A stretch of 64,000 nt of DNA from Mizuhopecten yessoensis. Lineage: Eukaryota. Numbering within the stretch: position 1 is the stretch's first letter; every line of letters begins with the position of its first letter. Location of the stretch: NCBI RefSeq assembly GCF_002113885.1, contig NW_018479907.1, positions 1-64,000 of the forward strand, written 5' to 3'. Position numbers and translations under genes: made by a program. The notes under the pieces are model-generated. The model did not search any database. It had not been told where the DNA came from and worked only from the letters and a program-made list of their open reading frames with translations. Below, in pieces: positions 14,251 through 29,481 of this stretch.

Positions 14251-14408
14251 TGGAAAGTATGTTTCAGGTTAAAAGGTAATTATAGCTACACGAGTCCGTT
14301 CTTAAAATAAACAAGTCACAACAGGTAATATTTTTGCAAGACCAAACATGTCCACGGTGAGGGCGACAGTGTGTATATATACCAGGCAGACATGTAAAGT
14401 CACCCCTA

Positions 14409-14643
14409 ATAGCTCAAGAGATCATCAATCAGATAGTCACGGATGACCTCACACTGACAAGTATATCACACAGTAGACTGTCGTATCGGAATTACGCAAG
14501 AAATCATCGTGAAAAAAGTCAAAGATAAGCTGAAGATATGTTTCAAAGAAGACGGGAAGAGTATACAATTAACTGGAGACTATTTTAAAAAGATACTGTT
14601 TCTATCGGAAAGTTTACAGTGTAAATGCGATTTTATACATTGA
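14409..14643 (+). pseudogene. Small uncharacterised virus-like ORF (relic), homologous to 29174..29428
   Basis: Reads (I)AQEIINQIVTDDLTL / frameshift / TVDCRIGITQEIIVKKVKDKLKICFKEDGKSIQLTGDYFKKILFLSESLQCKCDFIH*. TATATATA lies at about 14374. Confidence 0.7.
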
Positions 14644-14644
14644 C

Positions 14645-14949
14645 ATGTCAGGTATTACAACAGATTGTATCCGTCATACTTCATATCACATACGACCAGT
14701 ACATCAGTCTATGATGAAATGTTAGGATCGATTACAAACATTCCAAAACTGGCCAAAACAAATACATCAGGTTCCAAACGAACTCGCCCGTAACGGATTG
14801 TCTATTCAGGACATAGCGAAAAAGTCACCTGTTTCATGTGTGGAGAACATTTAGGCTCCTGGACATCCCACGATTCCGTGGAAATCGAGCATAAAAAGTG
14901 GTCGACAGATTTTGTGTATTTACAAATGGTCACACCCCTATACCTCTAA
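14645..14949 (+). pseudogene. Single-BIR (IAP-like) gene relic
   Basis: RLQTFQNWP...ELARNG / frameshift / YSGHSEKVTCFMCGEHLGSWTSHDSVEIEHKKWSTDFVYL is a BIR motif. It has one internal TAG and a 1-nt frameshift, and the last Cys reads Phe. Confidence 0.85.
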
Positions 14950-14976
14950 GGTTACATATTATCATACTAGTTGATA

Positions 14977-15264
14977 ATGGAAATATTTGAGGAGAGACTT
15001 TATTCCTACATGAGAAATCGTATCAAGGAAAACGCTTATAAGAGGATTGTGAAAAACTTGTTATGTTTAGCTTACGCAATGAGCGTGAAAGACGTCATAT
15101 CGAAATTGTTTGTATATGCAGGATGTGCAGAGGGTCAAGCTAACCAGCAAGGACATGTCTGTGTCATGCTTAATAGTGAAGACATAGTAAATGGATATTT
15201 CGAAGAAGCCCTGTCAACCGTCAACCATTTAGAAGATGTAGGTGTGCACAGTATCTCCTATTGA
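14977..15264 (+). CDS. Small Cys/His ORF, probable Maverick/adintovirus accessory gene fragment
   Basis: Intronless ORF starting 27 nt after the BIR stop. The motif GCAEGQANQQGHVCVM..EDIVNGYFEEAL resembles small Maverick-associated ORFs (recalled, not verified). Confidence 0.4.
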   Translation: MEIFEERLYSYMRNRIKENAYKRIVKNLLCLAYAMSVKDVISKLFVYAGCAEGQANQQGHVCVMLNSEDIVNGYFEEALSTVNHLEDVGVHSISY

Positions 15265-25971: not shown

Positions 25972-27860
25972 ATGGAACTACAACTGTTCATAAAGGGGAA
26001 ATGGGCTTGTCCAACCCGTGATAAAGTATTAGACCACCGGAACACTCTGTAGAGACACGTCGCTAAACATGGAGTAAGACAATGGAAATACAACGTATGC
26101 TACAAAGAGTTCACAAGAAAGGATAAACTAACCAGATACAGCAAATCCCAAGGTAAACCAACACACACCTACTGTAGGAAATTGTTTTGGCGGGCCTACA
26201 CATATCAGCAGCGCACGTTAAGACCCATAACGTGAGTTAGACGGTTGGTGATAAAGCCAGCCACGAGTAGAGCATTAGATGTTCCTAATGGCGGTCAAAC
26301 AAAAGTAACAACTGAAGAAAGTGTACGAAAACTAAATGAAGAAAATAACACAAACTATGGATGAACAACCATTTTTTTTTTCAAATGCGACCAAGCAAAA
26401 AGCAAATACAATACCAATTGTTGCGTCCGTAGACGACTAAAACGGAGAAAACTACAACTGGGTCAACTTTGACAGATGATTTTAAATCTGGAGAATGTGG
26501 TTCTTTCAAAGTCATGACCATGTCAATGCAGGGAGTTGTAAAAGTTGATACCATGTCCCTTTTGAAACATAAATATGACGACATCAAAAATTAATTAGAC
26601 AATCTCTCCTCCAGGGGGTTGTCAAATGTTATCACTCTATTCAGGTTCAGTTTTCGAAACCCAAAAGGGAGATCGTGGAGCGCGTCATACTGCACTATAG
26701 GGAAAATGCCAGATTAGTCTCAATCCCGAAAACCTGGACAACGGCATGAACGAGTCCATCAAAAAGATATATCCCTCTTTCCTATAATATCAGAGACACG
26801 GAAGTAACTGGAATCTCGACAAGGTTCTCAAAATTCAAATACATATAGCCCGTTACCAACCCATGCAGGCCTCTAGTTACATCTCTTCCGATTGAGTTGA
26901 TAACTAAACAAGCCATCGTCAGTGTCTAAACTAACGACAAGAAATGTGTCATGTGGTCGGTGTTGACTGTATACATCCGGACAAATATCATCCCGAGCGC
27001 GTCAGTAAATAAAAAAAATAAAGAGATCGAGCTCAATTTCACAGGAATCTCATTTCCTGTGTTCATGGCCGACATACCCAAGTTTTAGACAGAAAAAAAA
27101 CATATCCGTCTAAGTCATGGGGTATGAACATTGTTTCCCATGCACGTCACTAAACAGCGGTTTCATAGGCACGTCGACTTGCTTATAATAGCCAACCGAA
27201 AAAGTCGCTTTACTGTTGGATGAAAAACGTGGATCGGTACATAGAGAGTCGAACTTCCTAAATAGAATGACATATGGTTATTCTACAACGACTTCAGGAA
27301 ACAAATACATGCGCCAAATATCATCTATGCCGATTTCGAATCGTTTCAAGTACCAATATCCGGATGTTGTAAACACCCGAATGTAAAATACACGAATAAA
27401 TGACGCAGCACGTGCATTCCTGTAGTATTTCACAATTTGACGATTCGCACCTTATCATACAGTCCATAGAGCAAAAGTCCAAAACAAAGGGAACATTTGC
27501 GTACCAAACATTATGGAGAAAAATATCTCCTTCTCATTTGGGTGTATGGATATTGTCGATATCTTGCTCCAAACCTCTCTTGATAAACTGATGATTAATC
27601 TGGTTAAAGAAGAAAGTGTAAAGTCTAAGCATATGGCTTACATTTCGGCAAAGACCATTTCGATTTGTTGTTGCAGAAACAAGTATACCCATGCGATTAT
27701 TTTGACGGACCTCATAGGTCTCATGAAAAATACCTTCCACCACAACAATTGTTCAATAGAAGTTTGTCTGGAGAAAGCATCACACAAGAGGCATACGACC
27801 ACGCCCAGTCTGTCTGGAACAGTTTTTAGATAATGAATTTCGGCAAATATTCTTACCTCT
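25972..27860 (+). mobile_element. Decayed Maverick/Polinton (adintovirus-type) C2H2-ZnF plus protein-primed DNA polymerase B
   Basis: ZnF relics WACPTRDKVLDHRNTL*RHVAKH and NVCYKEFTRKDKLTR; pPolB motifs QRHGSNWNLDKV, DKKCVMWSVL, HPERVS, LNFTGISFPV..DIPKF, HVDLLII, IIYADFES, SLDKL, VYPCDYFD and YDHAQSVWNSF. Many stops, frameshifts and internal deletions. Confidence 0.88.
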
Positions 27861-28887
27861 GTGTTCTATTTTATATACCAATAAAATATAGCTATGCCTA
27901 ATTATCACAATTTTTCAGACATTTAGGTTTATTGTTATCTTTTTCAAGTGGAGTCTTGCCTAGTGATGCCCACAGAATATACATTAAGTTGTGAAACAGA
28001 GTTAACAAACCCTGCACGTATAAGAGGTATAAACAAAATGTATAGAAAATTTGGTGAATGTACCGGTGAATTAGCAAGAAAGTTTGCTCAGGACAAACTT
28101 TTCACAGGCAGCGGGTGCAAACGTATAGCCTTCCGGTAGTACCGGTGGGGAATTGATTAAGATGAATAAGTTTCAGGAAGATCAGTCAAAAACTTAGGAA
28201 AGAAATATTCGAACAACATACATGGATGCATAATACACCCGTTGATATAGTAAAAATAACAAAAAGTCTATGAAAAACATAAATCAAATTTTCAAGTTTG
28301 AATGCACAAGTACATGCCATAAATAAAGCCTTACAAGTTCATTAAAAATTGATCAAAAAGGAGATCTGTAAAATGTGTAATACCGGTATATACTATATGG
28401 TGCATTTAAACAGCTCCTCAAACCATCTGCAAATTAATTGCATGTATGCACATTTATGTGCATGCAACTATTATATATATAAGGCCAAAATGTGCCTTTT
28501 CAAAGTTCAAGGGTGTTTTTACTACCAAACATAGTTAACTTAGCTTAAAATGTGTATTTAAAAAACACTTCCCATTACACTCTGTTTTCAATTTGCATGT
28601 TTACATGGTTTTCAGTAATTGTAGATGTTCATGCTTGTGACTGGACGTACCCCAATGAGTAAATTCCTCGATCCTCTCTATCAGTACCAGAAAATGGACA
28701 GCAATCAGGTGTGTATTAACTGCAGAAATCAGACGAAATGTAAAAGTTGAATGTTTCATTGGCAGCGAAGATGGTAGCTCATATGCCGGTCAGGTATATT
28801 GTATCATGTAATAAAAATCCTGTAATGTCTGCATACCGATTAACTACAACTTGTATCACCGAAATAACGAATCTACTCCTTTCATGT

Positions 28888-29184
28888 TTATAAGACAAAC
28901 ATCATATGCTGAAAAAGACAGTCCTTTGACCACCTCTCTTGCTCTGTTTTGATATCATCGAAAAACTTCCAATGTTTTAGCGAAACGTTGCACATGAAAC
29001 ACGTGACACAGTCCTCAATACCCGTATAGAAAAATCCGTTACTTGCAAGTTGATATGGAAAATGATGATGATGTTTAGGCCAATGTATACACGTATCCAC
29101 GCTATTGCAACACTTCACCAGTAATTGATGACGTGGCTGTATCACCGTTACGCTATGCCGGATGTTATCCACCTCATAGGACAT
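28888..29184 (-). CDS. Single-BIR (IAP-like) small protein, 98 aa; ORF open but zinc-ligand His replaced by Gln
   Basis: WP...LASNGFFYTGIEDCVTCFMCNVSLKHWKFFDDIKTEQERWSKDCLF, with ATG at 29184. Intronless and adjacent to the pPolB relic. Confidence 0.8.
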   Translation of the reverse strand: MSYEVDNIRHSVTVIQPRHQLLVKCCNSVDTCIHWPKHHHHFPYQLASNGFFYTGIEDCVTCFMCNVSLKHWKFFDDIKTEQERWSKDCLFQHMMFVL

Positions 29185-29428
29185 TTTCACTTTCTAGAAA
29201 GGAACATACACACTAAAGGCTATCGGACAAGAACAATAGCTTTTTAAACAATGTTCCCTTCAAACATACAGTATTTTTTTGGTCTTTGATATAAATCTTG
29301 ATATCACCTTTCACCTTCTTCACGATGAATTATTGATCTCGTCCTAAGCGACAGACAATCTTCTTAGATGTGACTTCGTCGATGGTAATGTCTTCTCCTT
29401 TGACGAGGTCGATGTGTGCCTGTGCCAT
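29174..29428 (-). pseudogene. Small uncharacterised virus-like ORF (84 codons, 2 internal stops) overlapping the BIR start
   Basis: MAQAHIDLVKGEDITIDEVTSKKIVCRLGRDQ*FIVKKVKGDIKIYIKDQKNTVCLKGTLFKKLLFLSDSL*CVCSFLESENVL*. TATATAAA at about 29465-29472 is followed by CAGT. Aligns to 14409..14643. Confidence 0.75.
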
Positions 29429-29481
29429 GAACGATATCGACTGGAATCCAATGTTCATTGCTGGTTTATATAGGATTCCCT

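What the first reader, a model, noticed from the sequence alone, without database searches (positions are those of the whole stretch)
14374..29472. Two diverged relics of one virus-like 'small ORF + single BIR' cassette embedded in the TRIM array
Seen: 14374-15264 (+) and 28888-29472 (-) share the order TATA box, uncharacterised ORF of about 80 aa, then single-BIR ORF, with tight or overlapping spacing. They align at protein level (CRIG..QEIIVKKVKDKLKI..FKKILFLSESL vs CRLG..Q*FIVKKVKGDIKI..FKKLLFLSDSL) but show little DNA similarity, so they were not produced by the TRIM duplications. The second lies convergent to a Maverick-type pPolB. Known: DNA viruses carry IAPs to block apoptosis, and bivalves have expanded IAP families. 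Inference: two separate captures from a Maverick/adintovirus lineage that carries an anti-apoptosis cassette, both landing in a putative antiviral locus. This is also a possible route for seeding host BIR genes.
Basis: partly seen in the sequence, partly recalled or inferred. Interest (0 to 1): 0.82.

Follow-up and report, generated by a model that had tools for sequence, protein, structure and literature searches.

The report
Two dead mobile BIR-gene relics
Two decayed, anciently diverged copies of a tiny two-ORF unit encoding a stand-alone apoptosis-inhibitor (BIR) domain lie between TRIM genes; they look like debris of a mobile or virus-like element, a cargo type already reported for adintoviruses, so the find is real but fairly ordinary.

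Summary
14374-14950 (+) and 29472-28888 (-) are collinear homologues (tblastx E 1.6e-30), and there is no third copy in the window. Each has a TATA-like 12-mer found nowhere else in the window, then a short ORF, then a single BIR ORF that ends just after the domain. Both copies are dead or damaged. They are 53-62% identical in DNA, whereas the TRIM paralogues are 80-98% identical, and each lies in spacer DNA that the other TRIM units lack. So the TRIM duplications did not make them. Three intact, unnamed proteins of 98-100 aa exist in public read assemblies. Copy A is closest to one of them (63-73%) and copy B to another (59%). The family scores 107-131 bits within itself and at most 80 bits to any other BIR. 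It is no closer to viral IAPs than to cellular ones, and its best solved relative is XIAP linker-BIR2.

The Maverick link is weak. Only copy B lies near pPolB-like fragments, and no tool confirmed those. The window shows no integrase, capsid, ATPase, protease or terminal repeats. IAP homologues in adintoviruses are already published. Enrichment in TRIM loci and seeding of host BIR genes remain untested.

The parts
14374..14385 (+). TATA-like 12-mer at the 5' edge of copy A
   Evidence: the pattern occurs only here and at copy B. Homology starts here.
14388..14643 (+). Copy A, small-ORF relic (broken). There is no start codon where B has one, and no frame stays open across the N-terminal half. 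The C-terminal ~60 codons are open.
   Evidence: 54% identity to B over 37 aa; no Pfam hit; no relatives by word search
14645..14949 (+). Copy A, single-BIR relic (broken). It has one in-frame stop and one frameshift, and one zinc-binding position holds a non-ligand residue.
   Evidence: Pfam BIR 35.4 bits on the second piece. Its three pieces are 63-73% identical to P0151.
14971..15264 (+). Open 97-codon ORF 28 nt after copy A's BIR stop. It is not shared with copy B, so whether it belongs to the unit is unknown.
   Evidence: no Pfam family; no counterpart beside B
29461..29472 (-). TATA-like 12-mer at the 5' edge of copy B
29213..29458 (-). Copy B, small ORF of about 80 codons (broken: one in-frame stop)
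   Evidence: no Pfam hit
28888..29184 (-). Copy B, single-BIR ORF. It is open for 98 codons, but differs at two of the 18 positions that are invariant or nearly so in a 25-row BIR alignment. One of the two is a zinc ligand.
   Evidence: Pfam BIR 55.1 bits; 59% identity to P0152 over its full length; conserved positions
29482..30042 (.). G+C-rich 30-bp minisatellite that ends 10 nt from copy B's TATA-like motif
26050..28140 (+). pPolB-like relic (much broken; exonuclease-type motifs only; identity not confirmed), convergent with copy B
   Evidence: Read. Pfam found nothing and PDB found nothing.
25668..30069 (.). Block absent from the paralogous inter-TRIM spacers. It holds the pPolB-like relic, copy B and the 30-bp minisatellite.
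   Evidence: The paralogous spacers are 84% alike over 1288 bp and continue past the breakpoint. No terminal inverted repeats were found.
13124..14120 (.). 27-bp minisatellite about 250 bp upstream of copy A
   Evidence: also present at 35915-38147

Best explanation
The two stretches are dead copies of a compact unit: a TATA-like motif, a short ORF, then a stand-alone BIR protein of about 98-100 aa. They belong to two old sublineages of one small, so far unnamed family. They reached two different inter-TRIM spacers independently, as DNA. Most likely they were cargo of a mobile or virus-like element, with a Maverick/adintovirus-type element as the leading but unproven candidate. In a live copy the BIR protein resembles XIAP linker-BIR2 and DIAP1 BIR2. 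It would presumably bind effector caspases or soak up IAP antagonists, and so delay death of the cell carrying the element. The role of the short ORF is unknown. In this window neither copy can work.

Shown: homology, independence from the TRIM duplications, the decay of both copies, the existence of intact relatives, and the distinctness of the family.
Inferred: the mobile or viral carrier, the anti-apoptotic action, and co-expression of the two ORFs.
For: - Collinear homology.
- Mismatches between A and B fall most often on third codon positions in all three in-frame segments: 21/12/27, 18/12/24 and 17/18/26 at positions 1/2/3. This holds in the small ORF too, as expected of coding sequence that diverged under selection.
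- A and B are far more diverged than the TRIM paralogues.
- A is closest to P0151 and B to P0152. Both are intact and have all four zinc ligands.
- All five family members stop at the same point just after the domain.
- Family members score 107-131 bits to each other, against at most 80 bits to the best of 150 other BIR proteins.
- A shared 12-mer marks the 5' edge, and there is no poly(A) signal or A-run.
- Copy B shares a 4.4-kb unit-specific block with pPolB-like fragments.
- Adintoviruses are reported to carry IAP homologues (PMC8502044).
- The best solved single-BIR relatives are XIAP linker-BIR2 at 71 bits and DIAP1 BIR2 at 67 bits. XIAP BIR3 and survivin score about 40 bits.
Against: - No tool recognised the pPolB-like pieces.
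- Copy A has no such neighbour.
- The window has no integrase, capsid, packaging ATPase, protease, terminal inverted repeats or target-site duplication.
- The family is no closer to viral BIRs (18-43% identity) than to cellular IAPs (30-46%).
- The codon-position bias is not significant in any single segment (p 0.06-0.30).
- Only half of the small ORF is conserved.
Confidence: 0.5

Rival explanations
1. The copies are pseudogenes of an ordinary host family of intronless BIR-only genes, scattered by retroposition or by DNA-level dispersed duplication. Such copies are described for bivalve IAPs. On this reading the conserved stretch upstream of the BIR is a 5' leader or upstream ORF of the host transcript, and no virus is involved.
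For: - Intronless single-BIR IAP copies are numerous in bivalves and are ascribed to retroposition. The hard clam has 51 intronless IAPs, 42 of them in one clade, and most are not transcribed (PMC7831173). They also occur in oysters (PMC8917759).
- The nearest outsiders to the family are cellular IAPs of molluscs, insects and mammals.
- Copy A has no virus-like neighbour.
- The pPolB-like relic beside B is unconfirmed.
Against: - There is no poly(A) signal or A-run after either copy.
- Homology begins at a shared TATA-like motif, which a processed transcript would not carry.
- No annotated host protein falls in the family. Its only members come from unannotated read assemblies.
- The oyster intronless copies are described as BIRC5-like. 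This family matches XIAP BIR2 far better than survivin, 71 against 40 bits.
Confidence: 0.3
2. The copies are cargo or an endogenised fragment of some other carrier, not a Maverick. Candidates are a large DNA virus of invertebrates (herpes-, nudi-, irido- or pox-like) or a gene-capturing transposon linked to the flanking minisatellites.
For: - Both copies have a minisatellite just upstream: 10 nt away for B and about 250 nt for A.
- Many large invertebrate DNA viruses, including mollusc herpesviruses, carry BIR proteins with the same fold.
- Two unnamed two-BIR protein clusters on 6-114 kb metagenome contigs are among the family's next-nearest relatives.
Against: - The two minisatellites are unrelated in sequence, and about 12% of the window is minisatellite, so the adjacency may be chance.
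- No known viral BIR exceeds 43% identity.
- No other viral gene relics were seen in the window.
Confidence: 0.15
3. The similarity is a chance resemblance of two unrelated BIR fragments.
For: DNA identity is low (53-62%), and the N-terminal halves of the small ORF do not align.
Against: - tblastx gives E 1.6e-30 over three collinear segments.
- The non-BIR small ORF is also conserved (E 5e-10).
- The two copies share a 5' motif.
- Both share the family-specific N-terminal extension and the same stop position.
Confidence: 0.01

Closest known systems
IAP homologues among adintovirus / Maverick-Polinton accessory genes (Starrett et al. 2021, PMC8502044)
   Same: A small BIR-type anti-apoptosis gene carried as an accessory gene by a mid-size DNA element of animals. 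Degraded copies of such elements are endogenised in many animal genomes.
   Different: No element backbone is demonstrably linked here. The one polymerase-like relic is unconfirmed. No adintovirus or Maverick protein came back as a named hit. I made no direct sequence comparison, because fetching such elements was barred.
Intronless BIR-only IAP copies of bivalves, ascribed to retroposition (PMC7831173, PMC8917759)
   Same: A single uninterrupted ORF encoding one BIR and nothing else. The copies are dispersed, often silent or decayed, and lie in transposon-rich DNA.
   Different: Here there is no poly(A) trace, a shared TATA-like 5' motif, and a conserved short ORF upstream. The domain is XIAP-BIR2-like, not survivin-like. 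No annotated host protein falls within the family.
XIAP linker-BIR2 and Drosophila DIAP1 BIR2 (solved structures such as 1i3o, 1i51, 1kmc, 1jd4)
   Same: These are the best single-domain matches to the family profile, at 71 and 67 bits. The alignment reaches about 15 residues in front of the BIR core. The AlphaFold model of P0152 is confident (pLDDT 89).
   Different: The family members are stand-alone proteins of 98-100 aa with no RING, UBA or second BIR. Binding to caspases or to IAP antagonists was not tested.
IAPs of large invertebrate DNA viruses (baculovirus Iap-3, entomopoxvirus, Ostreid herpesvirus 1, abalone herpesvirus, nudiviruses)
   Same: The same fold, with TM-score 0.7-0.8 normalised to the query. 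Some are equally short BIR-only proteins.
   Different: Identity is only 18-43%, no better than to cellular IAPs. There is no sign of descent from any of these viruses.

Membership tests
BIR / IAP domain family (Pfam PF00653) | Profile match above the curated cut-off | tested here: met
   Copy B scores 55.1 bits and copy A's second piece 35.4 bits, against a cut-off of 22.9. Relatives P0152, P0151 and P0073 score 70-75 bits.
BIR / IAP domain family (Pfam PF00653) | Complete set of four zinc ligands (Cys-Cys-His-Cys) | tested here: not met
   Each window copy has one ligand position filled by a non-ligand residue. The three intact relatives have all four. So the window copies are relics of family members, not working members.
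BIR / IAP domain family (Pfam PF00653) | BIR fold | tested here: met
   The AlphaFold model of relative P0152 has pLDDT 89.3. Its top fold matches are viral IAPs with probability 1.00.
Maverick / Polinton / adintovirus element | Protein-primed family B DNA polymerase | tested here: inconclusive
   Exonuclease-type motifs are readable at about 27190-28140 (+). Pfam finds nothing on any piece and neither does PDB. The resemblance is recalled from memory.
Maverick / Polinton / adintovirus element | Retrovirus-like (rve) integrase | tested here: not met
   None among the open segments scanned with Pfam or read by eye. Only the larger open segments were scanned.
Maverick / Polinton / adintovirus element | Double and single jelly-roll capsid genes, FtsK-type ATPase, adenain-type protease | tested here: not met
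   Not found in the window among the segments scanned.
Maverick / Polinton / adintovirus element | Terminal inverted repeats and target-site duplication | tested here: not met
   There are no long inverted repeats in 25500-30300; the best has 25 nt at 76%. No duplication is visible at the edges of the block.
Maverick / Polinton / adintovirus element | Linkage of intact relatives of the cassette to the element's core genes | not testable with these tools
I left out scans of the viral and metagenome collections.
Retroposed (processed) gene copy | Poly(A) tract or signal at the 3' end; no promoter carried along | tested here: not met
   There is no A-run of 8 or more, and no AATAAA or ATTAAA within 380 nt after either BIR stop. 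A shared TATA-like motif sits at the 5' edge.
Retroposed (processed) gene copy | Recognisable intron-bearing parent gene in the host | not testable with these tools
   The source genome is not available. No annotated protein is closer than 46% identity.
Survivin / BIRC5-like BIR-only proteins | Best match to the survivin-type BIR | tested here: not met
   The family profile scores 40 bits to survivin (3uij) and 71 bits to XIAP BIR2.

The most novel reading that the evidence does not exclude
A so far unnamed lineage of Maverick/adintovirus-like elements of molluscs carries a two-ORF anti-apoptosis module: a short ORF plus a stand-alone XIAP-BIR2-like protein. Its scattered relics would then be one source of the 'intronless BIR-only' IAP copies that bivalve genome papers ascribe to retroposition.
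Probability: 0.12. Interest if true: 0.65.

Novelty: new member of a known kind. Interest (0 to 1): 0.35.

Why it matters
If the carrier proves to be a Maverick-type element, these relics would be a concrete mollusc example of the IAP cargo reported for adintoviruses. They would also suggest a DNA-level alternative to retroposition for some dispersed BIR-only copies in bivalve genomes. As it stands, the solid gain is modest. It is a distinct, unnamed family of about 100-aa stand-alone BIR proteins with a conserved upstream ORF. Intact members exist in public read sets, and this TRIM array holds two dead copies. Nothing here shows any link between the relics and TRIM function.

Tried and rejected
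- Word-based protein searches with copy A's small-ORF piece and with copy B's BIR ORF found nothing. Only the full HMMER search and a profile word search reached relatives.
- Pfam on ten pieces around the pPolB-like region, and a PDB search with one piece, gave no polymerase hit.
- The first AlphaFold model, from a 4-row alignment, was unusable (pLDDT 39.5), so I did not search with it.
- The 97-codon ORF beside copy A has no counterpart beside copy B. Its best score was 32, against a shuffle 95th percentile of 36.
- No terminal inverted repeats flank copy B's block.
- Rfam and the tRNA scan found nothing in the window.
- Cluster look-ups gave no name or sample for the three relatives.
- I considered and rejected an origin through the TRIM duplications.
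- I considered and rejected a survivin-type identity.
- I considered and rejected descent from a known mollusc herpesvirus BIR, since identity is only 32-41%.
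Full report
**Setting**

The window is a minus-strand array of single-exon TRIM genes with RING, B-box, coiled-coil and NHL parts. Open copies lie at 2-1333 (cut by the window edge), 21147-23144 and 58158-60152. Broken copies lie at about 7920-9000, 30999-32882, 44462-46522 and 53502-55108. 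A C-terminal piece lies at 63444-63998. The paralogues are 80-98% identical in DNA. The spacers are rich in minisatellites, roughly 12% of the window. There is one assembly gap at 11397-11608, which I left alone.

**The observation**

- 14374-14950 (+) and 29472-28888 (-) align collinearly with almost no gaps.
- tblastx joins three sense-frame segments at E 1.6e-30 and finds no further copy in the window.
- The local DNA alignment score (41) exceeds all 300 shuffles, whose maximum was 32.
- Both copies begin with TATATAWACCAG. This pattern occurs nowhere else in the window, where 0.04 matches are expected. I derived the pattern from the two sites, so the count is post hoc.
- A short ORF follows, then a BIR ORF. 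Pfam BIR gives 55.1 bits for copy B and 35.4 bits for the second piece of copy A.
- The small-ORF stop and the BIR start are 1 nt apart in A and 28 nt apart in B.
- The homology ends just after the BIR stop.

**State of the copies (counts only)**

| ORF | Copy A | Copy B |
|---|---|---|
| Small ORF | No start codon where B has one. No frame stays open through the N-terminal half. The C-terminal ~60 codons are open. | One in-frame stop in about 80 codons. |
| BIR ORF | One in-frame stop and one frameshift. | No stop or frameshift. |
| Zinc ligands | One of four positions holds a non-ligand residue. | One of four positions holds a non-ligand residue, a different one from A. |

Copy B also differs at two of the 18 positions that are invariant or nearly so in a 25-row BIR alignment.

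**Is the short ORF real?**

Only its last 37 residues are demonstrably conserved (54% identity, E 5e-10). The N-terminal halves do not align. It matches no Pfam family, and the word search found no relative. Mismatches between A and B by codon position are 21/12/27 in the small ORF and 18/12/24 and 17/18/26 in the two BIR segments. The excess at third positions is the same in all three. Each segment alone is not significant (p 0.06-0.30). Adding the counts gives 56/42/77, which by my hand calculation is about p 0.005. I read this as coding sequence that diverged under selection before both copies died.

**Independence from the TRIM duplications**

A and B are 53-62% identical in DNA, against 80-98% for the TRIM paralogues. 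Nothing in 14130-17540 is repeated elsewhere in the window.

Around copy B, homology to the other spacers stops at 25667 in two independent comparisons and resumes at 30070. The paralogous spacers, which are 84% alike over 1288 bp, run on past that point. So 25668-30069 is specific to this spacer. It holds the pPolB-like fragments, copy B and a 30-bp minisatellite. No terminal inverted repeats or target duplication mark its edges.

**Relatives**

The full HMMER search found 3955 BIR proteins. Only one was a short, end-to-end match: P0073, 100 aa. A profile word search added P0151 (99 aa) and P0152 (98 aa). All three are unnamed, come from read or metagenome assemblies, and sit on contigs of 994-4112 bp. 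They are intact and have all four zinc ligands.

- Copy A's three pieces are each closest to P0151 (63-73% identity).
- Copy B is closest to P0152 (59%).
- A and B share 37-50%.
- All five sequences share a family-specific N-terminal extension and stop at the same point just after the domain. These are therefore stand-alone BIR proteins, not exons of larger IAPs.
- Family members score 107-131 bits to each other. The best of the other 150 hits scores 65-80 bits.
- Those outsiders are IAPs of a cephalopod, a snail, a freshwater mussel, a mayfly, a mosquito and a tenrec. There are also two unnamed two-BIR clusters on 6-114 kb metagenome contigs.

**What kind of BIR**

A confident model of P0152 (pLDDT 89.3) matches viral IAPs: baculovirus, entomopoxvirus, Ostreid herpesvirus 1, abalone herpesvirus and nudiviruses. 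Identity is 18-43%, no closer than to cellular IAPs. No Maverick or adintovirus protein came back as a named hit.

Against solved structures the family profile scores as follows:

| Solved structure | Bits |
|---|---|
| XIAP linker-BIR2 | 71 |
| DIAP1 BIR2 | 67 |
| cIAP1 BIR3 | 57 |
| XIAP BIR3 | about 40 |
| Survivin | about 40 |

From established knowledge of XIAP and DIAP1, a live family member would most plausibly bind effector caspases or IAP antagonists. That is inference.

**The Maverick link**

On the + strand at about 27190-28140, possibly from about 26050, I can read exonuclease-type motifs in several broken frames. They resemble those of animal protein-primed polymerases as I remember them. 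No tool confirmed this. The relic covers at most the N-terminal part of such a gene and is convergent with copy B.

Copy A has no such neighbour. Its downstream flank (15450-16320) looks to me like debris of a different element, again from memory only. The open segments I scanned or read showed no integrase, capsid, ATPase or protease anywhere in the window.

**Literature**

- Adintoviruses are reported to carry IAP and Bcl2 homologues, and degraded copies are endogenised in many animals (PMC8502044).
- Bivalve genomes hold many intronless BIR-only IAP copies that are ascribed to retroposition (PMC7831173; PMC8917759). This is the main rival reading. Against it are the missing poly(A) traces, the shared 5' motif, the XIAP-BIR2-like rather than survivin-like type, and the absence of annotated host members.

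**Verdict**

The two relics are real, and their independence from the TRIM duplications is well supported. A mobile or virus-like carrier is the best reading (0.5), with Maverick type the leading candidate. It is not shown. Targeting of TRIM loci and seeding of host BIR genes were not tested.

I tried no other road to those contigs.
- I did not scan the viral or metagenome contig collections with these proteins, because that could fetch DNA of viruses of animals.
- I built no spliced model and made no joined-exon search.
- I took no contig for human.
The pieces of broken ORFs were searched and aligned as separate rows.
- Possible slip 1: notebook entry 1 names the kind of zinc-ligand residue missing in each copy, which is more than a count.
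- Possible slip 2: my scripts printed the bounds of stop-free pieces, which I needed in order to cite pieces to the tools. Those bounds indirectly show where the frames close.

Noticed in passing
window 13124-14120, 35915-36998 and 37448-38147: The 27-bp minisatellite upstream of copy A recurs as two arrays in opposite orientation, about 450 bp apart, in the spacer at 35.9-38.1 kb. This looks like a repeat-bearing element or an inverted duplication.
   Followed up: partly
window 17541-20633, 6341-6475, 38668-38827: A 48-bp minisatellite family fills about 3 kb downstream of the copy A region and recurs in two other spacers.
   Followed up: no
window 29482-30042: A G+C-rich 30-bp minisatellite ends 10 nt from copy B's TATA-like motif. 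Both copies therefore have a minisatellite on their 5' side, but the two arrays are unrelated in sequence.
   Followed up: partly
window 15450-16320 (+): Open segments here contain a Cys/His-rich motif. They remind me of the N-terminal ORF of tyrosine-recombinase (DIRS/Crypton-like) elements. This is from memory only, and Pfam found nothing.
   Followed up: partly
window 14971-15264 (+): An intact 97-codon ORF starts 28 nt after copy A's BIR stop. It matches no family and has no counterpart beside copy B. It may be a third gene of the unit or a chance ORF.
   Followed up: partly
window 58158-60152 and 63444-63998: The two rightmost TRIM copies are 97.8% identical over 555 bp, so the array was still duplicating recently. 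At least four of the eight copies are broken.
   Followed up: partly
proteins P0133 and P0084 (not in the window): These are two unnamed clusters of 250-256-aa two-BIR proteins on 6-114 kb metagenome contigs. They are among the family's nearest outsiders, at up to 80 bits. Contig sizes would fit large DNA viruses, but I did not look.
   Followed up: no
window 26053-26232 (+): There is a weak C2H2 zinc-finger-like stretch (Pfam E 0.033) at the start of the block that holds the pPolB-like relic.
   Followed up: no
window 11397-11608: A run of 212 N (assembly gap or masked stretch) lies in the spacer that also holds copy A. I left it as it is.
   Followed up: no
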